A stretch of 64,000 nt of DNA. It comes from Caecitellus pseudoparvulus. Its lineage: Eukaryota; Protista; Bigyra: Bicosoecida. The stretch is taken from the NCBI GenBank assembly GCA_965644315.1, contig CBFFRQ010000094.1, forward strand, positions 245,443-309,442, read 5' to 3'. Below the pieces are notes generated by a model. The model did not search any database, was not told the origin of the DNA, and worked only from the letters and a program-made list of their open reading frames with translations. Shown here in pieces: positions 8,494 through 64,000 of the stretch. The position numbers and the translations under genes were made by a program. Within the stretch, counting starts at the first letter, position 1; every line of letters begins with the position of its first letter.

Positions 8494-9722
8494 TCAGGGT
8501 GCATTTGAGCCCTCAGCAGCAGCGGCAGCAGCAGCGGTGGTGGGCGTATCGCTTGATGGCTCGGGCTCACCAGCCTCCCCCGGCGCAGGCGACACAGGTC
8601 GAATGGTCCAGTCAATTTCAGGCTCGCTCAGTCCCGCCAGGTGCTCGTTAACCTGCCGGAAGTGGCCGCAGCCGAAGAAGCCTCGAAACGCTGACAGGGG
8701 TGAAGGGTGTGGGCTGCGCAGCACAAGGTGGCGTGACGTGGACACCAGCTTGGCCTTGCTTTGGGCAGGCTTGCCCCACAGCAAGAACGCCACGTCCTTG
8801 CACTGCTTGGACACGTGGCGAATGGCGGCATCTGTGAAGGTCTCCCAGCCTTGCTTGGCGTGGGAATGCGCTGCGCCGGCACGGACGGTGAGCACAGTGT
8901 TCAGAAGCAGCACACCTTGCTGCGCCCAGCAAGTCAAGTCCCCACATCCAGGCGTGTCTGCGTGTGCGGGGGCAGCGGAGGGTGTGGCACTCGGTGACGG
9001 TGTGGCGAGGCAGGCCGGGGCACGCACTGGCCGACCCTGCAGGCAGGGCCGTGGCCGCTTCCTTCACGATGTTGCGGAGGGAGGGGGGCAGGGGCTTGAC
9101 CCCTGCAGGCACAGAAAAGCTCAGGCCGTGGGCTTGCCCGTGGCCGTGGTAGGGGTCTTGCCCCAGCACCACCACTCGCACTCTGTCCAGAGGCGTGTGC
9201 TGGAAGGCTGCAAAGGTGGCCGCTTCTGGGGGGAAGACAGTGCAGGAGGACCGCTGCTTGGCCACAAATGCCATGAGGTCTCGGAAGTACGGCTTGCCGC
9301 ATTCTTCACGGAACAGGGCATGCCAGGACGGGTGCACGGTGGCAGCTGGCGGGCCTGCGGCATTTGAAAGGTCGCCGCTGAGTGAAGGCCGCTCTCCAGC
9401 GCAGCCTAGGCCCACGCACACGTCTCTGCCATATCTGCCTCAAACGCTTCAATACTCAGCGACATCTGCGGCGACGCCTCTGCTCGTCGAGCTGCCTTGG
9501 TGCCTGTGTCTGGAAGGGAGCAGCGTGGCAGGCACTTGTGGCGTGTCTGTCCAGGGCCTGGCCCACGCACCCGTCCCAGCGCCTTGCGCCTCCCCATCTG
9601 AGCCCGAATCGGAGCGCCCCCGCTTCCCTGCGCAGCAGAAACCACCACGTTGCAGTGCTTGGCGTGGGCGCAATCCCAAGCCGGCCCTGCTCACCTTGCC
9701 GTTTGAAGAAGCTGGTGATCAT
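8494..9722 (-). CDS. UNG: Family 1 uracil-DNA glycosylase, 5 exons (9722-9695, 9627-9571, 9509-9420, 9354-9028, 8957-8494), 321 aa
   Basis: Motifs [65 protein letters not shown] and IDW are all present. Four phase-1 GT-AG introns (9694-9628, 9570-9510, 9419-9355, 9027-8958) join the frames, and the summed exon length of 966 nt is divisible by 3. The N-terminus [14 protein letters not shown] has a PIP-box-like motif and a basic NLS-like patch. Confidence 0.93.
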
Positions 9723-10364: not shown

Positions 10365-10424
10365 ATGGGTGGCTTGGCAGCTCTCTTGGCAGCATCCCTT
10401 GCTGCCAGCGTGGCTGCTACCGCC
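10365..10424 (+). other. Predicted N-terminal signal peptide of the giant protein
   Basis: MGGLAALLAASLAASVAATA has a hydrophobic Ala/Leu core and ends in A-x-A, followed by a polar/acidic mature sequence (IPSVEFTDG). Confidence 0.75.
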
Positions 10425-13400
10425 ATTCCGTCCGTGGAGTTCACGGACGGCCTTGGCACGGCTGACTTTGAGGGCGGTGAGCATTTCCGCATTCCTCCTC
10501 GTCCGTCTTCGTGAACCCCGAAGACTCCCACGCCTGCCCTGCCATCGCAGACGTTGGACTCCAGTTTACCTTGCGTAATACTGGAACTACCAATGGCTAC
10601 CAGGCGTTCATGGACCTCAGTGCGTGAAGTTTGCCTGACTGTTCTGCAGCTGTGCTGCGCCCACCCCCATGCTGCTGTTGCCTGCCGGGAGGCACCCACG
10701 GCAACTTGTGCAGCCATGCTAGCCTGACTGCCCAGTAAAATATTTTATTGTAGTGTGTCTCGCTGCGTTCTTGTCCCCGGGCCTTCGGAACAGCGGCATG
10801 GCGTGAGGCGGGGCCGTGCCCCGCCGAAACGTTACGTCAGCCATGGCGCACTGCGGCCCCCGTGCTGCCTATCCATCACGGAATTTTGTGTTGTTTTGAT
10901 GTATGAGACTCGTGTGGGTGTGGTTGGTGTGTACATCCCGTCCTTGCGGCGCTGGGCCGCTCGGCAGCTGCAGTGGGAGCGTTTTCGCGTAGTGGGCCCA
11001 CCCCCCGACACGTCCCTCACTCTGCTTGCCTCGTGCGTCACACCCTCACTGCGCGTGCTGCCCGCTCACCGCAGTTGTGCCTGAAGGTGCCACCGATGAA
11101 GTAATTGACGAGGAGCAAGTGACCACCCCCGTTGACGCTCTGGACCTTGGCAGTGGCGATGCGGATTTTGAGGGTGTCACCCGGCCAGCCTTCATGCTCA
11201 CCTTCGAAGAAGATGGCTGCCTCGATCACCCGTTCTTGGTGAACATGGGAACCCCTCTTCCCATTTGCGCCCAAGCTGGTGACCGGCTGTACTCCTGGAC
11301 GGCCCCTCTCAGCTCTCAACCGCCGAACGACGCGGTGCCCTTCGTGCTCACGCCGTCATCTGGCATCCTTCGAGAGGACCTTGACGCCTTTGACATCCGC
11401 ATTCGGTCTGGCTTCAGGGCGCAGACTCCCAGCGCTGACCCGAACACTTACGTGCCCCAGCTGACCCACAGCGAGAACAGCACGTTCTGGCAGCGGGGCA
11501 CCATTGTGCCGCGTCTCGTTGAGATGACCTTCAACCTACCTTCCCAGGGCTCTGTCGTCATCCGTGATTCCGTACGTCCAGCATCCATGTGTTTGAGGTT
11601 ATCTGTGCTCCTCTGGCGTCGCAGCGTGCCTGCGTCGCGGCAGGTCGCGCACCCTTCTTTCCTCACCCCTGCACCCCGCCTCCTTTCACAGGCTGCACGT
11701 TACCTGACTACTCGCTTGTCTGCGCCTGCAGAGTTCCTCATGCCACTTGCAGAGTGGAACTTCACCATGCCGACTGAGTATGAGCTGTTCGGCGCGACGC
11801 CAGTAACAGTGTCAGGGGACTTGGCACCTTTCCTCTCTCTGTCAGCTGCGGAAATCGAGACCAACCTCCGCACCAATCGCTCGTCCTTGATTCAGCTCGT
11901 GAACGTGACCACTGAGGGGATGAGTGGGCGCCCGGAGCTGGTGCTCACCGTGGCCTACTTCCCCCCTCGCTTCAACCAAGTCACTGGCATTGAGCAGGTG
12001 CGGGCGCTGCCCACCGACTTTGGCGGCTCTGGCACCTTCACCATTTCGACAGGCACCCTCATTTACAAGTCTGCCTCTCGAGTGAACGCCACATTCACCA
12101 CTGTCGCGAATATCGCGGAAACGACGACCATCACGCCAGCATTCCAGGCGTACTCGTTCAGCCACAACACGTATACGCCTGCTGGCCCATACGTTGTGAA
12201 CCAAACTCTCCGGACGGGGTTCAGTTTCCACTTCACCCCGCACATGGCCTTCGAGGCAGTGCACGCAGAGTCGTACTACGGGGATGGGTTTTTCATGTCA
12301 CCCGACACCATGAACACCCTCTTCACCTGCTCGGGGCGACTGGGCGCCATCACCAACTACCCCCTCGTCTACGGGCACCACTGGACCATGACACCAGACC
12401 CCGGCTCCAGCAGTGGCACCAGCAATGTCAGCATTGTGCTGGCTTTCAACCTCACCCTGGCAGCCAGCGACGCCCTCTCTGCAGGCGGACTGACCGCGAA
12501 CGAGGTGCCATTCAATGCCAGCAGCTGCAGCGTGCGGTATGACATGACCATCCTACGCAAGTTCGTGTCGAATGACAACCCTATCATTCACAACCAGGAC
12601 CTATACGGTCGAGCATCCATTGCCTTCCGAGCATGCGACATCGTGCCCCTGTCGCCAGCGTACCCCGGTGGATGCATGACACGAACACTGTCCCCTCCCG
12701 ACGGCGGCAGCCCAGACTCCACGCGAACCATTCGCATGGACGTGGGCAGGCCTACGCTGGAAATCTACGCTCTGGACCTGGTGCCATGCAGCCCGCAGCC
12801 GTGCGGCACCGCAGGCCCCGTGGAACTGCTCACCGATACCCTTGTCACATACCGGCTGCGGTACAACCTGCCGTTCACGTCCTTCGACGACTTCTTCATC
12901 ACCCTGTACTTGCCCGATCTGGTGGTGGATGTTGGGGCACTGAACCCTGATGGGCACCTGAACATTCCCATCTCTGGGGCTGGTGCGGCTCCGCCTGGAC
13001 TTGGCAATTTCTCTCGAGGACCGACCGACACCTTCACTGAGCTTTACTCAGCTGACCCCGTGTTCACGTACAGCACCCCTGCCAGCCTCATTGACCAGAC
13101 CATCGAGATCGCATGGCCGTCAGAGGAGAAGGATGTTCCAGGCCGCCCTTCTCAGATTGACTTCCTTTTCACCTTGCAGGTGCAGGTTGCAGTGTTGCCT
13201 GATCTTACCTCAGCAGGGGCGTTTGCCCTCACGACGGAGTCTGGCAACAGCGCGCGGGGCCAGTCCAAGGTTCCCTCCGTCCTGCGAAACCCTGACTTGC
13301 GCATGCTGGCCTTCTTCGTCGATATTTTCGGCAAGGGCTCTGCGCCCGAGGCCAGCATCGTCGAGCCAGTCGTTGGCTCCCCTTGGCAGCCGCTGAGCCC

Positions 13401-16400
13401 AGCCAGCGGCAACTCCTACCGCTTCGACCCCGCAGCCAACTTCTCTGCTGCCGACTTTGATGCGGTGGAAGGACAAGCTCAGGTTGCGCTTGACTTGGAC
13501 GCAGGCGACAATGTCACCGTCGTGGTGGCTGTGCTGAACGAAGGCGGTGTACGTGCTTTCCGCACGGTCATGAACTGTTCCATGAATGTGACTGAGTGGG
13601 CCTCTGACAGCCTGCGTCGCGACGTCATGGCACCTGAGGTGGACATTTCCGACCTGGGCCTAACCAGCACCTTTGCGACAGACAGCGCATCCTCGCCGCT
13701 GTACCCACACCCAAGCGACCACCCAGACAAGGTCACCGTTTCTCAGGTTGGAGGGCTGTGGAACCTGGGCGTTGAGTTTGGCATCATCGGGCCTGAGGAC
13801 GACGATGAGTCCCAGACCCCTGGGACAAACGTGAAGCTTGTCACGTTTGACATTCCAGTGGCTGACGGCGTGCGGCCTTCCGGGTCTGCTCCGTCTGTGG
13901 TGGACGGCACCCTGTCTGTCGGCTTTGGCGCAAGTCTGACCTCGCTTAACTGCAGGCTGAGCGACTACTCCTCTGTTCCACATGGACGCAGCTTTGTAGA
14001 CGAAGAGCCAGAGGATTACCCAATCGTGCCCCTCGTCGCGTATGCGAAAGGCATGAGCTTCGGTGGCGGTGTAGGCGCGCGCAATGTGTCACACCCCTCA
14101 ACCCCTCGAAATTTGCTTACTGATGGAGAGCAAGAGGTTGTTCTCGCAAGGTTTAACCTCCCAGAGGGGCGTGTGGCCAACGTCACTGTCGTGTTTCAAA
14201 TCAAAGGCGCACAGGTGGGCGACCTGCTCGTCGTGGATCCATCCGGCAGCCCGGACCTGGTCCTGCCTCAGCAGATCACATTTGCACCCGGCGGTTCTGC
14301 CTCTTGCATCGTTGTTTCGAGCATTGTGGCCCAGTGCACCTTGCTCGGAGTAACGAACCCCGGCGACAACATTGCCAACGACATGGTCAACGTCAGTCTC
14401 CCAGTGCGCATGCAGGACATGGCGACCACGCTCCATGCAGGGGCAACGTCGTCTGTCGGTGTGCGCATGGTAATTACAGATGACGAGCTGGGGACCCACG
14501 AGCCTGACGAGCAGACTGTGGCTTTCAGCGTAGCACCCCCAGTGCTCTTGGACGACACGGCAGCAACGCTGACTTCTGACGGGCCGCTGGGGACAGGTGA
14601 CAACCTGACCTATGCCATGACGCTTCGTCATGCTGATGAGGATGCTGGGGCTGTGTTTGAAGCGATTAAAGTCAGGATCAACTCCTACGATACGGAGATC
14701 TCTGCGCTCATCGGGGAGCTCAACGTCACCCTGCCTTGCTGCACTTGTACGGTCGGCGCTGCCCTGGTCGCCTCCAGTCCTGACACTGTGGAAGTCACCA
14801 TTTCAAACTGCGACCAGCTGCCTCTGCACAACGACGACATTTTTGTGGAGATGCCATTCCAAATGACGTCTCCTTCAGCTCCGCGTCAGATCTTGTCTGT
14901 TGACTCCACTTGGTCCTGGCTCTCCGGCCCTGCCAACGAGAGTGATGTTGGGGTTTGGGTCGAGAGGCAGCAAGCAGGATTACCAGCCAATCTGACCATT
15001 GAGGCTGGCCCGCTGCTGACCAACTTGACCCTCGCGGGAACTTCGTTGCTGGCAACGTCTGCATCTCAGGTGGTCATTGCCCAGGAAGACATCAGCCCAG
15101 GCGAAGTCCTTCTCATCGACTTTGCTGTCAACAGCCCGGCAAGCAACTGGACTTCAGATGTCGCCATTACTTTTCCTGCTGATTTCATACTCGTTGGCTC
15201 CTGGATCCCCGAGTTTGGTGCGGGGTGGGCAACCTCCTCTGGAGTTGCACTTGGGTCAAACGCAACTGCGGTGACCCTGACTTCCGCAGAGTGGCAGCTT
15301 GGCATTGTAGGTGTGGACCGCACTGGCCTTCCTGGGGAAATTGCAACGACTATCTTCCGGGCTGCTCTCACACTGAATGCTGCGGGAGTAGGGACTCCCA
15401 CCGCAGGAGATTCGTATACATTCGGTGCAAACATCGAGCCGACCTATCTCGACGAACCTCTCGACACCGTCGTGGTGGACGTGGTGGAGCCGTCGTTGGC
15501 TGTCAGCGTGGCAGCTGTGGGTGGCATCACGGGCGTGGAGGGGCAGGACTCCCTGACCTTCGACGTGACCATCGTGAACGACGACGGCGCTGGGAGCACT
15601 GGCCCCGCGTACGATGTGCGGGTGTACGACGACCGCCTGGGCGAGGACGCGCTGTTGACGACGGGGACGTACCGTGTGACATCTGTGAGCTACACGATTG
15701 GTGCGGGTCCGAGTGTGCCAGCGACAGCGGGTCTTGGTCGTGATGGCGGTGCGTTTGTGGAGATCCCGGAGGTGCCCCACGACGAGACGGTGGTTGTGCG
15801 GTATGTGGTGCAGGTGTCTGGTGACGTGGGCGCAGCTGTGGACCTGGCCGTGTCGCCGCATGTGGCGTACCGCAGCCATCCGTTGGAGCGCAGCGGGCTG
15901 TTGTTTGGGGATGCGTACCCGAGCAGTGCGATCCAGAACTACACGGCTGTGAGCGGGAACACGCTGACTGTGGAGGTGGCTGGCTTTGTGCCATCCCTGG
16001 CAACAGTGGACAGCGTGCTGCCTGGCACGAGCAGCGTGCAGATGGCGCCGGGCAACGCCGACATCGCCTTGGGGGAGGTGTTTGTGGTGGACTACACCCT
16101 GGACAGCCCTGTGAGCAACTGGACGTCTGATGCAGGCGTGACGTTTCCGTCTGACTTGGTGGTTGTGGGGGCGTGGGTGAACGAGTTTGGCAGCGGCTGG
16201 CGCAGCGAGGGCGGCGTGGTGCTGGGCACCAACGCCACGACCGTGACGAGCACTGCTGCGACGTGGGCTCTGGGCGAGGTGTCTGTGAATGACGGCAGTG
16301 TGTCACCTGGGGCAGGTGTGACTGCCGCTGTGCTGCGTGTGGCGTTTGTGCTGGACGGCAGTGGTGCTGGGTCGCCGGTGGCTGGCGTGACCCGGAGTGT

Positions 16401-19400
16401 GGTGGGGTCTCTGTCGCCTGGGCTGTTGGACGCGGCACTGCCCAGCATCTCTGTGGACGTGGTGGAGCCGTCGTTGGCTGTCAGCGTGGCAGCTGTGGGC
16501 GGCATCACAGGCGTGGAGGGGCAGGACTCCCTGACCTTCGACGTGACCATCGTGAACGATGACGGCGCTGGGAGCACTGGCCCCGCGTACGATGTGCGGG
16601 TGTACGACGACCGCCTGGGCGAGGACGCGCTGTTGACGACGGGGACGTACCGTGTGACATCTGTGAGCTACACGATTGGTGCGGGTCCGAGTGTGCCAGC
16701 GACAGCGGGTCTTGGTCGTGATGGCGGTGCGTTTGTGGAGATCCCGGAGGTGCCCCACGACGAGACGGTGGTTGTGCGGTATGTGGTGCAGGTGTCTGGT
16801 GACGTGGGCGCAGCTGTGGACCTGGCCGTGTCGCCGCATGTGGCGTACCGGAGCCATCCTTTGGAGCGCAGCGGGCTGTTGTTTGGGGATGCGTACCCGA
16901 GCAGTGCGATCCAGAACTACACGGCTGTGAGCGGGAACACGCTGACTGTGGAGGTAACAGGTGTACGAGTTGGTGTTTCTTCCCAAGATACCTCTCTTTC
17001 AGGGACAGCTTCTGGTCAACTGAATGGTGGTTGGGAGGATCTTAACATTGGTGAAGTATTGGTCTTCCAGTATGAGGTAGACAGCCCTGTGAGCAACTGG
17101 ACAGCAGTTGCAGAAACAACATTTAGCAATGATTTCACTCTCCTGGCAGCTTGGATTTCCTATCTTGGCTCTGGTTGGGTTTCTGGGAATGGACTTGCGT
17201 TTGGGTCAAATGCGACGTCGACAAGCCAGACAAACGCTGAGTGGGACTTCGGACTAACAGCTGTCAATGATGGGACTCTGTCTCCAGGAACAAGTGTAAC
17301 TGAAACCATCATGACATTGGCCCTTGTTCTGGATGCGTCTTCTGCCGGTTCCCCATCCGCAGCAGATACAGTTGAAGTTCGGGCACGTTTTCCTGGAGGC
17401 CTTCGCGATGGTGGTCAGCCAAGGATCCGCTATAATGTCCTTGAACCGTCGTTGGCTGTCAGCGTGGCAGCTGTGGGCGGCATCACAGGCGTGGAGGGGC
17501 AGGACTCCCTGACCTTCGACGTGACCATCGTGAACGACGACGGCGCTGGGAGCACTGGCCCCGCGTACGATGTGCGGGTGTACGACGACCGCCTGGGCGA
17601 GGACGCGCTGTTGACGACGGGGACGTACCGTGTGACATCTGTGAGCTACACGATTGGTGCGGGTCCGAGTGTGCCAGCGACAGCGGGTCTTGGTCGTGAT
17701 GGCGGTGCGTTTGTGGAGATCCCGGAGGTGCCCCATGACGAGACGGTGGTTGTGCGGTATGTGGTGCAGGTGTCTGGTGATGTGGACGCAGCTGTGGACC
17801 TGGCCGTGTCGCCGCATGTGGCGTACCGCAGCCATCCGTTGGAGCGCAGCGGGCTGTTGTTTGGGGATGCGTACCCGAGCAGTGCGATCCAGAACTACAC
17901 GGCTGTGAGCGGGAACACGCTGACTGTGGAGGTGGCTGGCTTTGTGCCATCCCTGGCAACAGTGGACAGCGTGCTGCCTGGCACGAGCAGCGTGCAGATG
18001 GCGCCGGGCAACGCCGACATCGCCTTGGGGGAGGTGTTTGTGGTGGACTACACCCTGGACAGCCCTGTGAGCAACTGGACGTCTGATGCGGGTGTGACGT
18101 TTCCGTCTGACTTGGTGGTTGTGGGGGCGTGGGTGAACGAGTTTGGCAGCGGCTGGCGCAGCGAGGGCGGCGTGGTGCTGGGCACCAACGCCACGACCGT
18201 GACGAGCACTGCTGCGACGTGGGCTCTGGGCGAGGTGTCTGTGAATGACGGCAGCGTGTCACCTGGGGCAGGTGTGACTGCCACTGTGCTGCGTGTGGCG
18301 TTTGTGCTGGACGGCAGTGGTGCTGGGTCGCCGGTGGCTGGCGTGACCCGGAGTGTGGTGGGGTCTCTGTCGCCTGGGCTGTTGGACGCGGCATTGCCCA
18401 GCATCTCTGTGGACGTGGTGGAGCCGTCGTTGGCTGTCAGCGTGGCAGCTGTGGGCGGCATCACGGGCGTGGAGGGGCAGGACTCCCTGACCTTCGACGT
18501 GACCATCGTGAACGACGACGGCGCTGGGAGCACTGGCCCCGCGTACGATGTGCGGGTGTACGACGACCGCCTGGGCGAGGACGCGCTGTTGACGACGGGG
18601 ACGTACCGTGTGACATCTGTGAGCTACACGATTGGTGCGGGTCCGAGTGTGCCAGCGACAGCGGGTCTTGGCCGTGATGGCGGTGCGTTTGTGGAGATCC
18701 CGGAGGTGCCCCATGACGAGACGGTGGTTGTGCGGTATGTGGTGCAGGTGTCTGGTGATGTGGACGCAGCTGTGGACCTGGCCGTGTCGCCGCATGTGGC
18801 GTACCGGAGCCATCCGTTGGAGCGCAGCGGGCTGTTGTTTGGGGATGCGTACCCGAGCAGTGCGATCCAGAACTACACGGCTGTGAGCGGGAACACGCTG
18901 ACTGTGGAGGTGGCTGGCTTTGTGCCATCCCTGGCAACAGTGGACAGCGTGCTGCCTGGCACGAGCAGCGTGCAGATGGCGCCGGGCAACGCCGACATCG
19001 CCTTGGGGGAGGTGTTTGTGGTGGACTACACCCTGGACAGCCCTGTGAGCAACTGGACGTCTGATGCGGGTGTGACGTTTCCGTCTGACTTGGTGGTTGT
19101 GGGGGCGTGGGTGAACGAGTTTGGCAGCGGCTGGCGCAGCGAGGGCGGCGTGGTGCTGGGCACCAACGCCACGACCGTGACGAGCACTGCTGCGACGTGG
19201 GCTCTGGGCGAGGTGTCTGTGAATGACGGCAGCGTGTCACCTGGGGCAGGTGTGACTGCCACTGTGCTGCGTGTGGCGTTTGTGCTGGACGGCAGTGGTG
19301 CTGGGTCGCCGGTGGCTGGCGTGACCCGGAGTGTGGTGGGGTCTCTGTCGCCTGGGCTGTTGGACGCGGCACTGCCCAGCATCTCTGTGGACGTGGTGGA

Positions 19401-52400: not shown

Positions 52401-55400
52401 GGCAGGGTACACGTCGGTGCCGGACCGCAGCGTGGCGCGGAACTACAGCGTGGTGCCTGGTGTGGGCGCTGTGGTGTCTGTGGTGGACACGGCAGAGGTG
52501 GACTTCAACGCGAGCATGGTTGCGGGTGCGGACGCGCCTGCCGGGAGTGGCGGTGTGACGCCTGTGACTGTGGGCGGTGAGGTGTCGTTTGAGTTGACGT
52601 TCGAGGTGCCTGAGGGGCAGATGAGCGGCGTTGACTTGCTTGTGAACTTCAGCGACCCTGTGCTGGTGCAGTGGATCAGCAGTGATCCGTCTGTGGTGGT
52701 GAGCATCACGCCCAGCTCGCCTGCTGTGACATCCAACTGCAGTGGGGGCCTGGCCGGCGCGGCCAGTGCTGCTGTGCTGCATGGTGATGGCGCCAGTGCC
52801 AGCGTGTCCCTGTGCACGCTCAGCAACACCGACGACGACAACGACGTGGTGGAGACGGTGACGGTGCGGCTGACGGGTGTGGTGCAGGATGTGCCATCTG
52901 CGGTGCAGGGCGCCTCGTTCATCCTGACGGCCAACGTGACCAGTGCTGAGGGGACGCCTGTGAACATGGTGGCTGGTCCGGGTGTGATTGCGGAGCCACT
53001 GCTGGAGGCGTCCCTGTCCAGCGGTCCGGTGGGCGGCAGCGTCGTGGACGCGAACGACACGCTGACGTTTGTGTTTGTGGTGGGTGCAGCCCCTGGCAGC
53101 GATGCGACGGCGTACAATGTGCGGGTGCAGGACACTGCGTTCGCGACTCAGGACGATGGTCTGGGCGGCGGTCCGGAGGGCAGCTCCAGCGGCGAGCCTC
53201 TGTACGAGGTGAGTGGCGTGACTGTGGACGGTGTGGCGGTGCCGCACGACAGCGTGGGCTTTGCTGCGGACGGGACGCTGGTGCTGTTGGGGGAGCTGGC
53301 AGTGTCCACTGGGGACATTGTGATCGAGGTGAACGTGACGCTGCGCACGGACATCGAGAGCGGGACAGGCGTGTCTCCGACGTTTGAGGTGACGTGGAGC
53401 AGTGCAGTGGACGGGAGCGGGGCACGGAACCGGACGCTGGTGGGGGGTGCCCTGTCAGCGCCGTCCGTGTCTGTGGCCCGTCCATCTGTCACTGTGCGCG
53501 CCGAGAGCGACGAGGCGACGTACGCCCCTGACACGTACAGCCTGGGCAGCACCGTCGTGCACGTGGTGCGAGTGACGGTTGCGGAGGGCACGATGCGGGG
53601 TGCGAGCATGACGCTGACGCTGTCTGACACGACTCGGTTTGCGTTTGTGGGTGTGTCCAGCATCACTGCGCCTGGCAGTGTGACGAGCAGCCATGGCGAC
53701 TGGGACAGCGTGGTGGCGCCGGGCCATGTGTCGAGCGTGGCTGGTACGTCCCTGACCGTGGACATGGGCACGGTGGTGAACCGTGACACGTCCAACGCCG
53801 TGTCTGAGGTGGTGGAGATGCGGGTGGTGACGGTGGCCCTTGTGAATGTGGGGCACGTGGCCGGCGTGGTGACAGGCGTGAGCGTGGAGGTGGTGAGCAG
53901 CGAGGTGGGCGCTGGTGTCGTGACGGACAGCACGAGCGTGACGGCTGAGGAGCCGGACGTGACGTACACTGTGTCGCTGCCTGCTGGCGGTCCGTACGAC
54001 GCTGGTGACGAGTTGGTGTTCACGGTGAGCGTGAGTGGTCTGGCTACGACAGGCGACGACAGCCCCGCGTACGGCGTGGTGTTGACGGACGGCGAGTTGT
54101 TGTCGGGCAGGTACTCTGTGGTGCAGGTGAACTCCAGCGTGGACGGCGTGTTGTTCACGGCTGATGCGGGTGACAGCGACTCTGGCTTTGGGAGCTTGGG
54201 TCGTGGTCCTGGCGGGTCCAGCGTGCCTGCTCTGGTGGGCAGCGTGGGCCGTGTGAATGTGAGCGAGGTGGTGGTGTTCACGTACGCGGTGAAGCTGGAC
54301 ACGAGCGTGGAGTCCGAGGAGGTGTTTGAGCCTGACGTGACAGTTGCGTGGAGCAGCCACCCCGGCAGCGTGCACGGTGTGGCGCGGAACTACACGCGTG
54401 ACATCGGTGGCGCTGGCAAGCCGGACGTGGTGATTGATTCGCCGGTGTACAGCGTGAGCGTGGTGCCGGATGGCTTCGGCGACTCCCCGAGCGAGGTGGT
54501 GGTGGGCCAGGAGGTGATCGTGACGGCAGTGGTGGAGGTGATCGAGGGCACGACGAGTGCTCCCATCGTGACGCTGACGCACACTGACGGCACGATGCTG
54601 CAGTGGGTGTCGGTGCTGTCCATCGAGGCGTCGTCGCCGAATGTGACGAGCTCCCACGGTGCATTCAGCAGCGTGCTGTCGGGGCACACGAGCGTGGTGC
54701 CTGGGTCCAGCGTGACTGTGGACTTGGGCACGCTTGAGAATGTGAACGTGGACAACGGCGTGGCCGAGACGGTGACGGTGCGTGTGCTGGCTGTGGTGCC
54801 TGACGCGGGTGCAGTGCGTGGTGCGACGGTGGACGTGGACACGGCGCTGACGGGCGGTGCGTTGGTGGGGACGTTCACGAGCAGCACGACGTTGACGCTG
54901 GCTGAGGGTGAGCTGAATACGAGCCCTGTGGTGGTGCCGCTGTCTGTGACGGATGTGGATGCGGGCGACTTTGTGACGACGAGCATCACGCTGACGCACG
55001 ATGGGGCATCGGATGCACCCGTGTACAACGTGACGGTGCGCGATGTGGAGCTGGCGAGCGGGGAGTACACGGTTGTGGGCGTGTCGGTGGACGGTGTGAG
55101 TGTGCCGTACAGCGCTGCGCCTGGTGGTGAGATCGTGGAGGTGGCGAGTCTGGCGCACGGCGCGAGCGTGGTTGTGAACGTGACGCTGCGCATGGACGTG
55201 AGCATTGAGACGGGTCACTTTGTGTCCCCGGAGCTGGTTGTGGAGTACACGTCGCACCCTGGCGGGTCGGGTCGCCCGGCGACGTTTGCGGTGCTGCCCC
55301 GGCAGGTGTTCGCTGTGGACGGCGCTGTGATCGGCAGTTCGACTGTGCTGGACGGGTCCAGTGCGGATGGTGCTGGTTTGGTGGTGGGCACTGTGGTGCA

Positions 55401-58400
55401 GGTGGTGACCCAGGTGGCGTTGCCTGAAGGCACCAGCCGCGACAGTCTGCTGGTGTTGGAGGTGACGGGTGTGACGGACGCCTTCAGCACGTGGAGCGTG
55501 GACTCTGTCGTGGACGCGTCTGGCAGCGGTGCCCTGAGCAGCAGCTGTGTGGGGAGCTTCGGCGCCCTGGCCAGCTACGGCGGCATCGTGCGCAACGCGT
55601 CCCATGTGCTGTTGCCCATGTGCGACGTGACGAACACGGACACCGACAACGGAGTGGCTGAGCCGTTCGTGGTGACGATGTCTGCCCGCGTGTTGGATGT
55701 GGTGTCTGTGCAGCAGGGCGCCTCTGTGAACATCACGGCATCATTCACGTCAGTGTCTGATGGTCCCATTTCTGTGTTGTCTGGCAACTTCACCGTGCGC
55801 GAGGCAGGGTTGGAGGCGGCCAGTGTGACGCCCAAGGCTGTGGCGGGTGTGGACGGCGGCGACAGCGTGGTTGTGACTGCGGTGGTGGACCACACGGGCA
55901 GCTCTGACGCGCCTGCGTACAGCATCATCGTGCGGGACAACGGCACGGCAGTGTACCGCGAGGACGACGGGTCGGTGGTGGCTGCCGCTGCAGCCCCGCA
56001 GTACATCTTGACGGAGGTGCGGGTGAACGGTGTGGTGCAGGGCGGGCCCTTGACCCACGGCAGCGACGGCGTGGTGGTTGTGATTGCCTCCTTGCCTGCT
56101 GGCGCAACTGCGACGGTGCAGGCGACGTTCACGGTGCAGGGCGTGGTGGAGCCGAGCGTGCGGCTGGTGCCGTGGCTGAGTCTGGACTGGAGCAGTCACC
56201 CTGAGGGGAGCGCCGCGCGGAATGCGAGTGTTGTGGGCGGGGAGGGTGTGAGCGCCGCGCTGGTGGACACGGCGACACCTGCGGGGCAGGTGGGTGTGGT
56301 GTCACCCAGTCCTGGTCTGACGGCCAGCATCGGTGAGCTGGTGACGTACACGCTGAACGTGAGTGTGGTGGAGGGGACGCTGCGGTCCAGTGCGCTGCGC
56401 GTGGAGGTGCTGCCAGTTGTGACTGCGGTTGCGACGGAGGTGGTGCAGTTTGGTGCGCCGGCGCTGAGCAGCGTGCGCAGCTACCGTGTGACGGCGGGTG
56501 GCGTGGAGAGCGCTGCGCCGTTGGTGTCGTCTGATGTTGCGGGTGTGGGCAGCACGTTCAGCGGATTTGTGGGTCTGGAGAGCGCGTTGGTGAGTGAGCA
56601 AGGCTTCACGCTGGGCACTGGGACGGTGGTGAACGGGCACCTGTCTGACGGCGGCGCTGATGGGCTGGTGGAGGAGATGGAGCTGGTGTACACGGTGCGC
56701 GTGCGGGACGTGGACGTTGGCTCCGATGCGATTATGCGTGGTGACACGTTCGAGAGCCGGGTGGAGTTGACGTCTGCGGGCGTGGAGAGCGGTGAGGTGG
56801 TGCTGGTGAGCCCCACGGTGACTGTGATTGAGCCCAGCTTGGCGGCGTTGGTGGTGAGCCCCACCGCGGTGTCTGGCGTGGACGGCAGCGATGTGATTGT
56901 GTTCGAGGTGCTCGTGAGCCATGACGGCGCCTCGGACGCTGACGCGAACAACGTGGAGGTCGTGGACACGGCCCTGGTGGGCGGTGTGCCGGGGGCCCCC
57001 TACGAGCTGCTGGCCGTGTACGTGGACGGTGTGCTGGTGTACGAGGCCGGCGTGGACGACGACAGCGCTGTGCTGTCTGACGGTGCGCTGGCGACGTTGC
57101 CAGTGCTGGGTCTGGGCAGCACTGCGAATGTGACGTACGTGGTGAGCGTGAGCCCGGTGGCGGAGGTGGGCAGCACCCTGACGCCAGATGTGCAGGCAGG
57201 GTACACGTCGGTGCCGGACCGCAGCGTGGCGCGGAACTACAGCGTGGTGCCTGGTGTGGGCGCTGTGGTGTCTGTGGTGGACACGGCAGAGGTGGACTTC
57301 AACGCGAGCATGGTTGCGGGTGCGGACGCGCCTGCCGGGAGTGGCGGTGTGACGCCTGTGACTGTGGGCGGTGAGGTGTCGTTTGAGTTGACGTTCGAGG
57401 TGCCTGAGGGGCAGATGAGCGGCGTTGACTTGCTTGTGAACTTCAGCGACCCTGTGCTGGTGCAGTGGATCAGCAGTGATCCGTCTGTGGTGGTGAGCAT
57501 CACGCCCAGCTCGCCTGCTGTGACATCCAACTGCAGTGGGGGCCTGGCCGGCGCGGCCAGTGCTGCTGTGCTGCATGGTGATGGCGCCAGTGCCAGCGTG
57601 TCCCTGTGCACGCTCAGCAACACCGACGACGACAACGACGTGGTGGAGACGGTGACGGTGCGGCTGACGGGTGTGGTGCAGGATGTGCCATCTGCGGTGC
57701 AGGGCGCCTCGTTCATCCTGACGGCCAACGTGACCAGTGCTGAGGGGACGCCTGTGAACATGGTGGCTGGTCCGGGTGTGATTGCGGAGCCACTGCTGGA
57801 GGCGTCCCTGTCCAGCGGTCCGGTGGGCGGCAGCGTCGTGGACGCGAACGACACGCTGACGTTTGTGTTTGTGGTGGGTGCAGCCCCTGGCAGCGATGCG
57901 ACGGCGTACAATGTGCGGGTGCAGGACACTGCGTTCGCGACTCAGGACGATGGTCTGGGCGGCGGTCCGGAGGGCAGCTCCAGCGGCGAGCCTCTGTACG
58001 AGGTGAGTGGCGTGACTGTGGACGGTGTGGCGGTGCCGCACGACAGCGTGGGCTTTGCTGCGGACGGGACGCTGGTGCTGTTGGGGGAGCTGGCAGTGTC
58101 CACTGGGGACATTGTGATCGAGGTGAACGTGACGCTGCGCACGGACATCGAGAGCGGGACAGGCGTGTCTCCGACGTTTGAGGTGACGTGGAGCAGTGCA
58201 GTGGACGGGAGCGGGGCACGGAACCGGACGCTGGTGGGGGTGCCCTGTCAGCGCCGTCCGTGTCTGTGGCCCGTCCATCTGTCACTGTGCGCGCCGAGAG
58301 CGACGAGGCGACGTACGCCCCTGACACGTACAGCCTGGGCAGCACCGTCGTGCACGTGGTGCGAGTGACGGTTGCGGAGGGCACGATGCGGGGTGCGAGC

Positions 58401-61400
58401 ATGACGCTGACGCTGTCTGACACGACTCGGTTTGCGTTTGTGGGTGTGTCCAGCATCACTGCGCCTGGCAGTGTGACGAGCAGCCATGGCGACTGGGACA
58501 GCGTGGTGGCGCCGGGCCATGTGTCGAGCGTGGCTGGTACGTCCCTGACCGTGGACATGGGCACGGTGGTGAACCGTGACACGTCCAACGCCGTGTCTGA
58601 GGTGGTGGAGATGCGGGTGGTGACGGTGGCCCTTGTGAATGTGGGGCACGTGGCCGGCGTGGTGACAGGCGTGAGCGTGGAGGTGGTGAGCAGCGAGGTG
58701 GGCGCTGGTGTCGTGACGGACAGCACGAGCGTGACGGCTGAGGAGCCGGACGTGACGTACACTGTGTCGCTGCCTGCTGGCGGTCCGTACGACGCTGGTG
58801 ACGAGTTGGTGTTCACGGTGAGCGTGAGTGGTCTGGCTACGACAGGCGACGACAGCCCCGCGTACGGCGTGGTGTTGACGGACGGCGAGTTGTTGTCGGG
58901 CAGGTACTCTGTGGTGCAGGTGAACTCCAGCGTGGACGGCGTGTTGTTCACGGCTGATGCGGGTGACAGCGACTCTGGCTTTGGGAGCTTGGGTCGTGGT
59001 CCTGGCGGGTCCAGCGTGCCTGCTCTGGTGGGCAGCGTGGGCCGTGTGAATGTGAGCGAGGTGGTGGTGTTCACGTACGCGGTGAAGCTGGACACGAGCG
59101 TGGAGTCCGAGGAGGTGTTTGAGCCTGACGTGACAGTTGCGTGGAGCAGCCACCCCGGCAGCGTGCACGGTGTGGCGCGGAACTACACGCGTGACATTGG
59201 TGGCGCTGGCAAGCCGGACGTGGTGATTGATTCGCCGGTGTACAGCGTGAGCGTGGTGCCGGATGGCTTCGGCGACTCCCCGAGCGAGGTGGTGGTGGGC
59301 CAGGAGGTGATCGTGACGGCAGTGGTGGAGGTGATCGAGGGCACGACGAGTGCTCCCATCGTGACGCTGACGCACACTGACGGCACGATGCTGCAGTGGG
59401 TGTCGGTGCTGTCCATCGAGGCGTCGTCGCCGAATGTGACGAGCTCCCACGGTGCATTCAGCAGCGTGCTGTCGGGGCACACGAGCGTGGTGCCTGGGTC
59501 CAGCGTGACTGTGGACTTGGGCACGCTTGAGAATGTGAACGTGGACAACGGCGTGGCCGAGACGGTGACGGTGCGTGTGCTGGCTGTGGTGCCTGACGCG
59601 GGTGCAGTGCGTGGTGCGACGGTGGACGTGGACACGGCGCTGACGGGCGGTGCGTTGGTGGGGACGTTCACGAGCAGCACGACGTTGACGCTGGCTGAGG
59701 GTGAGCTGAATACGAGCCCTGTGGTGGTGCCGCTGTCTGTGACGGATGTGGATGCGGGCGACTTTGTGACGACGAGCATCACGCTGACGCACGATGGGGC
59801 ATCGGATGCACCCGTGTACAACGTGACGGTGCGCGATGTGGAGCTGGCGAGCGGAGAGTACACGGTTGTGGGCGTGTCGGTGGACGGTGTGAGTGTGCCG
59901 TACAGCGCTGCGCCTGGTGGTGAGATCGTGGAGGTGGCGAGTCTGGCGCACGGCGCGAGCGTGGTTGTGAACGTGACGCTGCGCATGGACGTGAGCATTG
60001 AGACGGGTCACTTTGTGTCCCCGGAGCTGGTTGTGGAGTACACGTCGCACCCTGGCGGGTCGGGTCGCCCGGCGACGTTTGCGGTGCTGCCCCGGCAGGT
60101 GTTCGCTGTGGACGGCGCTGTGATCGGCAGTTCGACTGTGCTGGACGGGTCCAGTGCGGATGGTGCTGGTTTGGTGGTGGGCACTGTGGTGCAGGTGGTG
60201 ACCCAGGTGGCGTTGCCTGAAGGCACCAGCCGCGACAGTCTGCTGGTGTTGGAGGTGACGGGTGTGACGGACGCCTTCAGCACGTGGAGCGTGGACTCTG
60301 TCGTGGACGCGTCTGGCAGCGGTGCCCTGAGCAGCAGCTGTGTGGGGAGCTTCGGCGCCCTGGCCAGCTACGGCGGCATCGTGCGCAACGCGTCCCATGT
60401 GCTGTTGCCCATGTGCGACGTGACGAACACGGACACCGACAACGGTGTGGCTGAGCCGTTCGTGGTGACGATGTCTGCCCGCGTGTTGGATGTGGTGTCT
60501 GTGCAGCAGGGCGCCTCTGTGAACATCACGGCATCATTCACGTCAGTGTCTGATGGTCCCATTTCTGTGTTGTCTGGCAACTTCACCGTGCGCGAGGCAG
60601 GGTTGGAGGCGGCCAGTGTGACGCCCAAGGCCGTGGCTGGCGTGGACGGCGGCGACAGCGTGGTGGTGACTGCGGTGGTGGACCACACGGGCAGCTCTGA
60701 CGCGCCTGCGTACAGCATCATCGTGCGGGACAACGGCACGGCAGTGTACCGCGAGGACGACGGGTCGGTGGTGGCCGCCGCTGCAGCCCCGCAGTACATC
60801 TTGACGGAGGTGCGTGTGAACGGTGTGGTGCAGGGCGGGCCCTTGACCCACGGCAGCGACGGCGTGGTGGTTGTGATTGCCTCCTTGCCTGCTGGTGCGA
60901 CTGCGACGGTGCAGGCGACGTTCACGGTGCAGGGCGTGGTGGAGCCGAGCGTGCGGCTGGTGCCGTGGCTGAGCCTGGACTGGAGCAGTCACCCTGAGGG
61001 GAGCGCCGCGCGGAATGCGAGTGTTGTGGGCGGTGAGGGTGTGAGCGCCGCGCTGGTGGACACGGCGACACCTGCGGGGCAGGTGGGTGTGGTGTCACCC
61101 AGTCCTGGTCTGACGGCCAGCATCGGTGAACTGGTGACGTACACGCTGAACGTGAGTGTGGTGGAGGGGACACTGCGGTCCAGTGCGCTGCGCGTGGAGG
61201 TGCTGCCAGTTGTGACTGCGGTTGCGACGGAGGTGGTGCAGTTTGGTGCGCCGGCGCTGAGCAGCGTGCGCAGCTACCGTGTGACGGCGGGTGGCGTGAA
61301 GAGCGCTGCGCCGTTGGTGTCGTCTGATGTTGCGGGTGTGGGGAGCACGTTCAGCGGATTTGTGGGTCTGGAGAGCGCGTTGGTGAGTGAGCAAGGCTTC

Positions 61401-64000
61401 ACGCTGGGCACCGGGACGGTGGTGAACGGGCACCTGTCTGACGGCGGCGCTGATGGGCTGGTGGAGGAGATGGAGCTGGTGTACACGGTGCGCGTGCGGG
61501 ACGTGGATGTTGGCTCCGATGCGATTATGCGTGGTGACACGTTCGAGAGCCGGGTGGAGTTGACGTCTGCGGGCGTGGAGAGCGGTGAGGTGGTGCTGGT
61601 GAGCCCCACGGTGACTGTGATTGAGCCCAGCTTGGCGGCGTTGGTGGTGAGCCCCACCGCGGTGTCTGGCGTGGACGGCAGCGATGTGATTGTGTTCGAG
61701 GTGCTCGTGAGCCATGACGGCGCCTCGGACGCTGACGCGAACAACGTGGAGGTCGTGGACACGGCCCTGGTGGGCGGTGTGCCGGGGGCCCCCTACGAGC
61801 TGCTGGCCGTGTACGTGGACGGTGTGCTGGTGTACGAGGCCGGCGTGGACGACGACAGCGCTGTGCTGTCTGACGGTGCGCTGGCGACGTTGCCAGTGCT
61901 GGGTCTGGGCAGCACTGCGAATGTGACGTACGTGGTGAGCGTGAGCCCGGTGGCGGAGGTGGGCAGCACCCTGACGCCAGATGTGCAGGCAGGGTACACG
62001 TCGGTGCCGGACCGCAGCGTGGCGCGGAACTACAGCGTGGTGCCTGGTGTGGGCGCTGTGGTGTCTGTGGTGGACACGGCAGAGGTGGACTTCAACGCGA
62101 GCATGGTTGCGGGTGCGGACGCGCCTGCCGGGAGTGGCGGTGTGACGCCTGTGACTGTGGGCGGTGAGGTGTCGTTTGAGTTGACGTTCGAGGTGCCTGA
62201 GGGGCAGATGAGCGGCGTTGACTTGCTTGTGAACTTCAGCGACCCTGTGCTGGTGCAGTGGATCAGCAGTGATCCGTCTGTGGTGGTGAGCATCACGCCC
62301 AGCTCGCCTGCTGTGACATCCAACTGCAGTGGGGGCCTGGCCGGCGCGGCCAGTGCTGCTGTGCTGCATGGTGATGGCGCCAGTGCCAGCGTGTCCCTGT
62401 GCACGCTCAGCAACACCGACGACGACAACGACGTGGTGGAGACGGTGACGGTGCGGCTGACGGGTGTGGTGCAGGATGTGCCATCTGCGGTGCAGGGCGC
62501 CTCGTTCATCCTGACGGCCAACGTGACCAGTGCTGAGGGGACGCCTGTGAACATGGTGGCTGGTCCGGGTGTGATTGCGGAGCCACTGCTGGAGGCGTCC
62601 CTGTCCAGCGGTCCGGTGGGCGGCAGCGTCGTGGACGCGAACGACACGCTGACGTTTGTGTTTGTGGTGGGTGCAGCCCCTGGCAGCGATGCGACGGCGT
62701 ACAATGTGCGGGTGCAGGACACTGCGTTCGCGACTCAGGACGATGGTCTGGGCGGCGGTCCGGAGGGCAGCTCCAGCGGCGAGCCTCTGTACGAGGTGAG
62801 TGGCGTGACTGTGGACGGTGTGGCGGTGCCGCACGACAGCGTGGGCTTTGCTGCGGACGGGACGCTGGTGCTGTTGGGGGAGCTGGCAGTGTCCACTGGG
62901 GACATTGTGATCGAGGTGAACGTGACGCTGCGCACGGACATCGAGAGCGGGACAGGCGTGTCTCCGACGTTTGAGGTGACGTGGAGCAGTGCAGTGGACG
63001 GGAGCGGGGCACGGAACCGGACGCTGGTGGGGGGTGCCCTGTCAGCGCCGTCCGTGTCTGTGGCCCGTCCATCTGTCACTGTGCGCGCCGAGAGCGACGA
63101 GGCGACGTACGCCCCTGACACGTACAGCCTGGGCAGCACCGTCGTGCACGTGGTGCGAGTGACGGTTGCGGAGGGCACGATGCGGGGTGCGAGCATGACG
63201 CTGACGCTGTCTGACACGACTCGGTTTGCGTTTGTGGGTGTGTCCAGCATCACTGCGCCTGGCAGTGTGACGAGCAGCCATGGCGACTGGGACAGCGTGG
63301 TGGCGCCGGGCCATGTGTCGAGCGTGGCTGGTACGTCCCTGACCGTGGACATGGGCACGGTGGTGAACCGTGACACGTCCAACGCCGTGTCTGAGGTGGT
63401 GGAGATGCGGGTGGTGACGGTGGCCCTTGTGAATGTGGGGCACGTGGCCGGCGTGGTGACAGGCGTGAGCGTGGAGGTGGTGAGCAGCGAGGTGGGCGCT
63501 GGTGTCGTGACGGACAGCACGAGCGTGACGGCTGAGGAGCCGGACGTGACGTACACTGTGTCGCTGCCTGCTGGCGGTCCGTACGACGCTGGTGACGAGT
63601 TGGTGTTCACGGTGAGCGTGAGTGGTCTGGCTACGACAGGCGACGACAGCCCCGCGTACGGCGTGGTGTTGACGGACGGCGAGTTGTTGTCGGGCAGGTA
63701 CTCTGTGGTGCAGGTGAACTCCAGCGTGGACGGCGTGTTGTTCACGGCTGATGCGGGTGACAGCGACTCTGGCTTTGGGAGCTTGGGTCGTGGTCCTGGC
63801 GGGTCCAGCGTGCCTGCTCTGGTGGGCAGCGTGGGCCGTGTGAATGTGAGCGAGGTGGTGGTGTTCACGTACGCGGTGAAGCTGGACACGAGCGTGGAGT
63901 CCGAGGAGGTGTTTGAGCCTGACGTGACAGTTGCGTGGAGCAGCCACCCCGGCAGCGTGCACGGTGTGGCGCGGAACTACACGCGTGACATTGGTGGCGC
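10365..64000 (+). CDS. Giant secreted repetitive beta-sandwich (DUF11 / fimbrial-D2-like) protein, >17,600 aa, C-terminus beyond the window; exons 10365-10476, 10551-10619, 11075-11571, 11692->64000
   Basis: There is a 47-kb stop-free ORF (11026..58368), and the frame continues to the window end after a single-G deletion at 58236-58240. Upstream exons supply an ATG in ACCATGG context and a signal peptide (MGGLAALLAASLAASVAATA), giving IPSVEFTDGLGTADFEG-D-VGLQFTLRNTGTTNGYQAFMDL-I-VPEG. The composition is V/S/G/T/A/D-rich and acidic, with alternating ~160-aa A and B domains. Confidence 0.9.
10477..10550 (+). other. Giant gene intron 1 (74 nt, phase 1)
   Basis: GTGAGC donor and pyrimidine-rich ...GCCATCGCAG acceptor. 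It removes the in-frame stop at 10512-10514; G+AC=Asp. Confidence 0.8.
10620..11074 (+). other. Giant gene intron 2 (455 nt, phase 1)
   Basis: GTGCGT donor and GCTCACCGCAG acceptor with a CTCAC branch-like motif. A+TT=Ile joins FMDL to VPEG in the frame of the 47-kb ORF. Confidence 0.75.
11572..11691 (+). other. Giant gene intron 3 (120 nt, phase 0, stop-free, hidden inside the ORF)
   Basis: GTACGT donor, CCTCAC branch-like motif and TCCTTTCACAG acceptor. The read-through peptide VRPASMCLRLSVLLWRRS...LLSQ is Arg-rich and compositionally unlike the acidic flanks. Confidence 0.75.
15475..22792 (+). repeat. Coding tandem array, 978-bp (326-aa) unit, 7.5 copies (8 B-type + 7 A-type domains)
   Basis: The unit start (V-V/L-E-P-S-L) recurs at 15481, 16459, 17437, 18415, 19393, 20371, 21349 and 22327, an exact 978 spacing. 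Copies are near-identical except for one divergent A domain at 16956-17445. Confidence 0.97.
22793..24717 (+). other. Unique (non-homogenised) linker of two diverged A+B domain pairs between the two arrays
   Basis: The same motif skeleton is present (e.g. LIGQTVHMQVLVQLPE...ELGNLTNLDFDDDVPE; ADSGDIVAFTV...AFNVELYD...FTSVNG...PRNYS), but there is no nucleotide-level repeat and more codons end in A/T. Confidence 0.8.
24718..64000 (+). repeat. Coding higher-order tandem array, 4,794-bp (1,598-aa) unit, 8 full copies + partial ninth, continuing past the window
   Basis: The unit start (P-S-I/V-T-V-R-A-E-S-D-E) occurs at 24718, 29512, 34306, 39100, 43894, 48688, 53482, 58275 and 63069 (spacing 4794, or 4793 across the indel). 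Only scattered SNPs separate the copies. Confidence 0.98.
58236..58240 (+). other. Single-G deletion frameshift in repeat unit 7 (probable sequencing/consensus error)
   Basis: The run after CTGGT is G5 here but G6 in every other copy (e.g. 29472-29477, 53442-53447, 63029-63034). It causes the apparent stop at 58366-58368. Confidence 0.9.

What the first reader, a model, noticed from the sequence alone, without database searches (positions are those of the whole stretch)
10365..64000. Titin-scale secreted protein (>17,600 aa, ~105 tandem beta-domains) in an intron-containing eukaryotic gene: candidate undescribed extracellular fibre/adhesin system
Seen in sequence: a signal-peptide exon, three 5' GT-AG introns, then one >52-kb exon that is open to the window edge apart from one homopolymer indel. 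The summed coding length is ~52,990 nt (~17,660 codons) with no C-terminus yet. The protein alternates two ~160-aa domain types: A (G-x-x-V-x-x-x-x-x-V-x-x-x-E-G...LG-x-x-x-N-x-D-x-D-N...E) and B (EP-x-L...D-A/G-x-D...AY-x-V-x-x-x-D...W/Y-x-S-H-P...R-N-Y). Manual count is ~4 domains before the arrays, 15 in array 1, 4 in the linker and 80+ in array 2. Established: titin and the PKZILLA polyketide synthases are the familiar eukaryotic proteins of this size class, and both are intracellular. Inference: at ~4-5 nm per Ig-like domain an extended chain would reach ~0.4-0.5 micrometre or more. That suits a tether, prey-capture or attachment filament, extrusome content, or cell-coat element. The function is not determinable from sequence alone.
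Basis: partly seen in the sequence, partly recalled or inferred. Interest (0 to 1): 0.95.

Follow-up and report, generated by a model that had tools for sequence, protein, structure and literature searches.

The report
Giant bacterial-type adhesin stalk in protist
A marine protist carries a gene for a surface protein of at least 17,600 amino acids that looks like a whole bacterial "sticky fibre" gene taken over, stripped of its internal chemical cross-links and greatly lengthened; such fibres were thought to be confined to bacteria and archaea.

Summary
In detail: four exons, 52,987 coding nt (at least 17,660 codons), open to the contig end, with one G6-to-G5 slip at 58,236-58,240. There are about 109 beta-domains in a 326-aa array and a 1,598-aa super-repeat (8.2 copies). 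Copies differ almost only at silent sites (pN/pS 0.07), so the frame is under selection. The protein is not an orphan. Head and stalk are homologous to giant bacterial DUF11/CLIPPER surface proteins (1,778 clusters; e.g. the planctomycete Stieleria), and a B+A pair folds into two pilin-type CnaA beta-sandwiches. The bacterial Lys/Asp/Asn isopeptide triad is lost (0 of 61 domains, against 349 of 440 in bacteria), and N-glycosylation sequons are enriched. Seven paralogous loci with a visible end finish in multi-pass membrane modules; the closest (C53) has head, stalk, EGF/TSP1 and membrane helices. Relatives occur in Cafeteria and Balamuthia. Best reading: a membrane-anchored, roughly 0.5-micrometre fibrillar tether of bacterial origin. 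Giant extracellular eukaryotic proteins are already known (Dumpy, MST3). The scan noted paralogs of this family before, on other contigs of this genome.

The parts
10365..10476 (+). Exon 1: start codon, about 20-aa Ala/Leu-rich signal peptide and start of head domain 1
   Evidence: signal peptide judged by eye, no predictor run
10477..10550 (+). Intron 1 (74 nt, GT-AG, phase 1)
10551..10619 (+). Exon 2; matches positions 45-65 of the bacterial head profile in the predicted frame
   Evidence: weak alone, iE 0.025
10620..11074 (+). Intron 2 (455 nt, GT-AG, phase 1)
11075..11571 (+). Exon 3; matches positions 77-208 of the bacterial head profile
   Evidence: iE 7e-12; E 6.9e-8, genome search with the bacterial alignment
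11572..11691 (+). Intron 3 (120 nt, GT-AG, phase 0, in frame and stop-free; could be retained)
   Evidence: no match to head profile
11692..15486 (+). Start of exon 4: remaining head domains (profile 393-828 matched at about 12,214-13,587), then degenerate A, B and A' domains
15487..22830 (+). Array 1: 978-nt (326-aa) B + A' units, 8 B and 7 A'; one older A' copy at about 16,950-17,440
22834..24717 (+). Linker of four unique domains (A-B-A-B)
24718..64000 (+). Array 2: 4,794-nt (1,598-aa) super-repeat of five different A/B pairs, about 8.2 copies, 82 domains, cut by the contig end
58236..58240 (+). Five-G run (six G in the six earlier units): single frameshift, most likely a consensus error; leads to the stop at 58,366-58,368

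Best explanation
A domesticated bacterial fibrillar-adhesin gene working as a very long cell-surface tether. SHOWN: gene structure; homology of head and stalk to bacterial DUF11/CLIPPER giants; CnaA-type fold (predicted); loss of the isopeptide triad; purifying selection on the repeats; membrane modules in paralogs. INFERRED: the signal peptide sends the chain into the ER; it is N-glycosylated and folds into at least 109 beta-sandwiches in series (about 0.5 micrometre at 4.5-5 nm each); a C-terminal EGF/TSP1 plus multi-pass module, as in paralog C53, holds it in the plasma or flagellar membrane; the conserved head sits at the far end and contacts surfaces or bacterial prey. Glycans, two disulfides per super-repeat and a conserved acidic loop (possibly Ca2+-binding) may replace the lost cross-links. 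Unequal crossing-over and conversion set the reach.
For: Profile of 29 B+A pairs hits 1,778 clusters; the top 150 are mostly 2.5-7.7 kaa and bacterial in type; three tested carry DUF11 far above cut-off. Model pLDDT 90; A domain matches pilin CnaA domains EbpB Z 13.4, RrgB 12.6, CLIPPER 9IFR 12.2, rmsd 2.3-2.7; best Atlas match DUF11, TM 0.74. Exons 2, 3, 4 scored apart match successive positions of a 60-sequence bacterial head profile. 44 silent vs 8 replacement differences among units, p 4e-18. 22 of 38 Asn per unit in sequons vs 7.6 by shuffle; 52% of all Asn vs 14-26% in bacteria. EGF/TSP1/multi-TM module in the same open frame as A/B repeats on C95, C78, C44, C54, C89, C53; C55 ends in another Cys-rich + TM module. 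C53 also has the head and is the closest paralog. CLIPPER repeats form stalks of fibrillar adhesins (10.1101/2025.04.25.650565).
Against: This gene's own C-terminus is missing and no continuation contig was found. No known ligand-binding domain at the tip: the first two head domains of a bacterial homologue are beta-sandwiches, the second clearly CnaA-type. No function has been shown for this bacterial subfamily either. No expression data. A shared fold shows no function. Trees are unrooted and short, so direction of transfer is not proven.
Confidence: 0.55

Rival explanations
1. Long-range contact or force sensor: the stalk is an antenna that gates or activates the multi-pass module (as PKD1/MST3 or adhesion GPCRs do); loss of isopeptide clamps would make it an extensible spring.
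For: Paralogs have about 8-9 hydrophobic helices with large cytoplasmic loops, more than an anchor needs; weak lead to TRP-like PF06011 clusters (score 0.79); the Balamuthia relative is followed by a PF06011-marked multi-pass frame.
Against: No Pfam channel or GPCR match for the module; Atlas score under 0.9; module not seen for this gene. Not exclusive of tethering.
Confidence: 0.17
2. Protective coat or spacer: a dense brush of acidic, glycosylated rods that keeps giant viruses, predators or bacteria away; repeat number sets coat thickness.
For: Strongly acidic (183 D+E vs 45 K+R per unit), nearly Lys-free, about 240 sequons; at least eight long paralogs with independently expanded arrays; no recognisable adhesive tip.
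Against: The bacterial head is kept in two paralogs under evident constraint; near-identical repeats do not look like a diversifying antigen.
Confidence: 0.12
3. Released or extruded fibre without an anchor (matrix, stalk or extrusome material).
For: Signal peptide; C-terminus unknown; one eukaryotic relative (P0003) ends in a Ser/Pro/Thr tract without a clear module in the called frame.
Against: All seven paralogous loci of this genome with a visible end have membrane modules.
Confidence: 0.09
4. Length inflated by assembly, or gene recently broken at 58,240.
For: Units 3 and 6 are identical over 4,794 nt; contig ends in the array; no reads examined; the frameshift is in the consensus.
Against: All other unit pairs differ by 4-34 mostly silent sites in mosaic patterns, which read errors or assembler duplication do not give; unit 8, past the slip, has 6 silent and 1 replacement private changes; similar slips break paralog arrays on C53 and C164. 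Even without array 2 the protein exceeds 4,700 aa.
Confidence: 0.07

Closest known systems
Bacterial giant DUF11/CLIPPER (PF01345) surface proteins, subfamily with a conserved 900-aa head and alternating pilin-D2-like and DUF11 domains (e.g. Stieleria tagensis P0036; Planctomycetota, sortase-anchored and others)
   Same: Homologous head in the same order, same A/B alternation and motifs, same CnaA-type fold.
   Different: Eukaryotic gene with introns; isopeptide Lys and Asn lost; sequons and Cys pairs gained; three to six times longer through near-identical arrays; paralogs end in EGF/TSP1/multi-pass modules instead of bacterial sorting signals.
Gram-positive pilin D2 domains and antigen I/II C-terminal domains (RrgB, BcpA, SpaD, EbpB, SpaP, PrgB)
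   Same: Fold of the A domain and of tandem pairs (Z 12-13.6).
   Different: 8-20% identity; those are cross-linked and often sortase-polymerised; here one chain without cross-links.
Chlamydomonas MST3/Mstax and animal PKD1
   Same: One giant chain sets the length of a surface filament and ends in a multi-pass membrane domain (PMC11015965); architecture of the paralogs is analogous.
   Different: MST3 is a hydroxyproline-rich helix with a PKD-like domain; no homology found.
Drosophila Dumpy (2.5 MDa)
   Same: Extracellular, membrane-tethered giant of the same size class (PMC10895422; anchoring role from own knowledge).
   Different: EGF/DPY modules, 78 exons; unrelated sequence and fold.
Titin
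   Same: Size class and higher-order super-repeat of beta-sandwiches.
   Different: Intracellular I-set Ig and FN3 domains with a kinase (own knowledge); no such Pfam match here.

Membership tests
CLIPPER/DUF11 (PF01345) | Match to the Pfam model above its cut-off | tested here: not met
   No hit for window segments; only 1 of 29 pairs hits, E 1.9e-4; none in NCBIfam.
CLIPPER/DUF11 (PF01345) | CnaA-like beta-sandwich fold | tested here: met
   AF2 pLDDT 90; Z 12.2 to 9IFR, 12.4 to TTHA1873; TM 0.74 to a DUF11 cluster. Direct matches are mainly for the A domain; B is covered by the tandem and Atlas matches.
CLIPPER/DUF11 (PF01345) | Sequence homology to DUF11-bearing proteins by profile search | tested here: met
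Intramolecular isopeptide-bond domains (CLIPPER, pilin D2) | Lys/Asp/Asn triad | tested here: not met
   Triad in 211/282 A and 138/158 B bacterial domains, 0/30 and 0/31 in this genome; B keeps the Asp (27/31) and mostly has Pro at the Asn site. Triad columns were assigned from alignment and the spacing.
Fibrillar adhesins | N-terminal export signal | tested here: inconclusive
   Ala/Leu-rich 20-aa N-terminus by eye; sequon enrichment fits ER passage; no predictor available.
Fibrillar adhesins | Tandem stalk domains | tested here: met
Fibrillar adhesins | Known adhesive domain at the tip | tested here: inconclusive
   Head domains 1-2 of a bacterial homologue: beta-sandwiches, best matches pilin and antigen I/II; only DUF11 in Pfam.
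Fibrillar adhesins | C-terminal surface anchor | not testable with these tools
   Contig ends; present in seven paralogous loci.
Fibrillar adhesins | Demonstrated binding to a ligand or surface | not testable with these tools
   Needs experiment.
Titin-like / Dumpy-like giants | I-set Ig, FN3, EGF-DPY or ZP domains | tested here: not met
   No such Pfam hit in window segments.
PKD1/MST3-like or adhesion-GPCR-like receptors | Channel or 7TM domain after a giant ectodomain | tested here: inconclusive
   Paralog module: about 8-9 helices, no Pfam hit, weak TRP-like lead.

The most novel reading that the evidence does not exclude
A family of protist surface fibre-receptors arose when a whole bacterial giant-adhesin gene was taken up by an ancestor of this organism and Cafeteria, lost its isopeptide cross-links, was fused to eukaryotic multi-pass signalling modules, and now forms single-chain, length-tunable antennae of 0.5 micrometre or more (this member possibly above 20,000 aa) that capture or sense bacterial prey.
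Probability: 0.25. Interest if true: 0.85.

Novelty: new variant of a known kind. Interest (0 to 1): 0.62.

Why it matters
The 2025 survey of isopeptide-bond domains set eukaryotic hits aside as probable contamination. Here is an intron-bearing, selected, multi-copy eukaryotic branch of that domain class, shared with Cafeteria and hidden from annotation because array frameshifts split it into small hypothetical genes. It gives named candidates for how bacterivorous nanoflagellates attach to surfaces and catch prey, whose molecular basis I did not find described, and it can be tested in Cafeteria, which is in culture and has a spatial proteome. It is also a natural experiment in how a stalk fold does without its covalent clamp. 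If expressed at full length it is among the largest extracellular proteins known.

Tried and rejected
Extending the contig: it ends at the window edge. DNA search for more array-2 units could not be scored; protein searches found no other contig with the unit above 39% identity. C78 starts at a contig edge but follows the C44/C54 layout, so it more likely continues C164 (inference). C184 and C197 carry the membrane module but showed no A/B match. The spliced model was scored exon by exon; the joined search was left out. Word-based searches for long relatives gave nothing or two fragments. PDB sequence search: nothing. Bacterial contamination rejected: introns, sequons, eukaryote-type neighbours (GAF-phosphodiesterase, split UDG), eukaryotic neighbours of relatives. 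Integrin leg hits in Foldseek are generic tandem-Ig matches (TM about 0.4, rmsd about 10). The organism could not be named; a stramenopile near bicosoecids is a guess from the Cafeteria relatives (about 30% identity).

Full report
Observation. The + strand has a stop-free frame from 10,993 to 58,368 and a second from 58,182 to the edge. The window is the last 64 kb of contig C94 in a 30.6-Mb, 215-contig genome, so the missing C-terminus is an assembly limit. Three GT-AG introns (74, 455, 120 nt) join four exons in phase, for 52,987 coding nt, at least 17,660 codons. The exon-4 part alone is about 1.75 MDa (two frames summed for composition only). The single break is a five-G run at 58,236-58,240 where six earlier units have six.

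Anatomy. After a probable 20-residue signal peptide come about eight unique domains, array 1 (978-nt period; 8 B and 7 divergent A' domains), a four-domain linker and array 2 (4,794-nt period; five different A/B pairs; about 8.2 copies, 82 domains): about 109 domains. Among array-2 copies 52 sites vary, 43 at third codon positions, 44 silent and 8 replacement, pN/pS 0.07, p 4e-18; array 1 gives 24 to 5. Variants are shared in mosaic blocks, as expected from unequal crossing-over and conversion. Units 3 and 6 are identical, so one or more copies could still be assembly-made; reads were not available. The order of the five pairs is old: marine fragments P0010, P0034 and P0042 are collinear with it at 44-54% identity, and paralog C53 has the same series.

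What the domains are. Pfam and NCBIfam miss the window protein. A profile of 29 pairs from the window and paralogs hits 1,778 clusters; the best 150 are mostly giant proteins of bacterial type. Three tested carry DUF11 far above cut-off with DUF7619, DUF7507, SdrD_B or a sortase domain; one is from the planctomycete Stieleria tagensis. AlphaFold gives two all-beta domains, pLDDT 90. The A domain matches CnaA-type pilin domains and the CLIPPER structure 9IFR at Z 12-13; the best Atlas match is a DUF11 cluster, TM 0.74. [quoted passage not shown]

The whole gene is homologous, not only the stalk. The unique start of exon 4 matches the N-terminal region of dozens of the bacterial proteins. Against a profile of 60 such heads, exons scored separately match successive positions in the frames the splice model predicts: exon 2 at 45-65 (weak), exon 3 at 77-208 (iE 7e-12), exon 4 at 393-828; introns do not match. 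The exon-4 match is circular, since it chose the proteins; exons 2 and 3 are independent support for the splice model. The joined search was left out. The first two head domains of the Stieleria protein fold as beta-sandwiches, the second CnaA-type; no known ligand-binding tip was found.

What changed in the eukaryote. The Lys/Asp/Asn triad is present in 211 of 282 A and 138 of 158 B bacterial domains and in none of 61 from this genome; B keeps the Asp as a vestige. Sequons are three times the shuffle expectation (22 vs 7.6 per unit), two A domains per unit have a Cys pair, and the acidic Asn-x-Asp-x-Asp-Asn...Glu loop is kept from bacteria; calcium binding there is a guess. In quick trees of B and of A domains, this genome, Cafeteria and the marine eukaryote-like proteins form one side of a branch against the bacteria (SH-aLRT 99 and 93). 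The trees are unrooted, the domains short, compositions differ and the profile was built from this group, so a bacterium-to-protist transfer is the likely reading (broad bacterial family, intact chemistry there, vestigial here) but is not proven.

The missing end. At least eight other contig stretches encode A/B stalks in frames of 2,100-7,900 codons. P0011, 98% identical to the C95 gene, ends in EGF-like repeats, a TSP1 domain and about 8-9 hydrophobic helices. This module lies in the same open frame as A/B repeats on C95, C78, C44, C54, C89 and C53; C55 ends in a different Cys-rich plus membrane module. C53 is the closest paralog and the only other one with the head: head, about 40 domains, EGF/TSP1, membrane module, about 9,000 aa with one frameshift. 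It is the best model for the end of this gene. No continuation contig was identified.

Distribution. Cafeteria roenbergensis has at least 22 kb of tandem A/B domains, split by frameshifts into small annotated genes such as FNF28_03689. A complete relative sits among eukaryotic genes on a metagenome contig. Balamuthia mandrillaris has a 4,237-aa relative with the head, followed by a multi-pass frame; its domains group among bacteria. The organism itself is unnamed; its UDG is 99% identical to one in a Mariana Trench metagenome run.

Mechanism. Most likely (0.55) a membrane-anchored tether reaching about 0.5 micrometre or more, head outward, for attachment or prey contact. Fold, homology, selection and paralog anchors are shown; export, length, anchoring of this member and adhesion are inferred. 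Rivals: contact or force sensor through the multi-pass module (0.17), protective coat (0.12), released fibre (0.09), inflated or broken gene (0.07).

Comparison and verdict. It works like a bacterial fibrillar adhesin and descends from the DUF11/CLIPPER-bearing giants, but fails two membership features (Pfam cut-off, isopeptide triad), so I file it as a derived eukaryotic variant, not a CLIPPER member. Size alone is not unprecedented outside cells: Dumpy is 2.5 MDa, MST3 8,572 aa, and DUF11 is common in huge bacterial proteins (PMC11573180). I found no paper on a eukaryotic branch; the library is incomplete. Earlier notes of this scan flagged paralogs and the DUF11 likeness; my DUF11 lead was written down before I saw them, and they are not counted as evidence. 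Interest 0.62.

Noticed in passing
L038:6001-22550 (Balamuthia mandrillaris KAL6071150.1, P0027): Intron-containing eukaryotic gene that keeps the whole bacterial head (484 bits) and at least one B domain with an intact Lys/Asp/Asn triad (near residue 1,703); groups among bacteria. Candidate for a eukaryotic intramolecular isopeptide bond and a separate acquisition. The downstream multi-pass frames are probably the same gene.
   Followed up: partly
L035:1-22286 (Cafeteria, VLTL01000052.1): At least 22 kb of tandem A/B domains broken by many frameshifts and annotated as several small hypothetical genes; probably one giant gene.
   Followed up: partly
P0034, P0042, P0064 (NCBI MAGs labelled Mesoflavibacter and Desulfobacteraceae): Short contigs (1-2 kb) whose proteins are collinear with this protist's repeats and lack the triad; likely mis-binned protist DNA.
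   Followed up: partly
L036:221-1700 and L039:6351-7600 (C95-type paralogs; also C44, C164): A second subfamily has a different N-terminus: a Cys-Cys-Arg...Asn-Ser-Cys-Pro motif domain, then cadherin-like and IPT-like domains by eye. From memory it recalls integrin-beta-like/Sib-type adhesion proteins; no Pfam hit, untested.
   Followed up: no
G000:C164:1-24518: Paralog with about 24 near-identical 326-aa units, many frameshifts, cut by the contig end; C78:1-11100 may be its continuation.
   Followed up: partly
window 16950-17440: One diverged A' domain stranded inside the otherwise homogenised array 1 (about 260 differences from the other units).
   Followed up: partly
window 938-6751 (- strand): Large GAF-GAF-phosphodiesterase (PDEase_I) gene in pieces (introns or slips), with long low-complexity linkers.
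   Followed up: partly
window 8494-9722 (- strand): Uracil-DNA glycosylase gene in two or more exons, head to head with the giant gene, about 640 nt between the presumed start codons.
   Followed up: partly
G000:C18, C30, C56, C32, C69, C52, C41, C6, C43 and others: More than 20 loci share the Cys-rich plus membrane tail of P0001, several in frames of 3,000-8,000 codons: a large family of giant-ectodomain membrane proteins in this genome.
   Followed up: no
G000:C184:36300-38648 and C197:46987-49317: Two near-duplicate loci carry the EGF/TSP1/multi-pass module without detected A/B stalk.
   Followed up: partly
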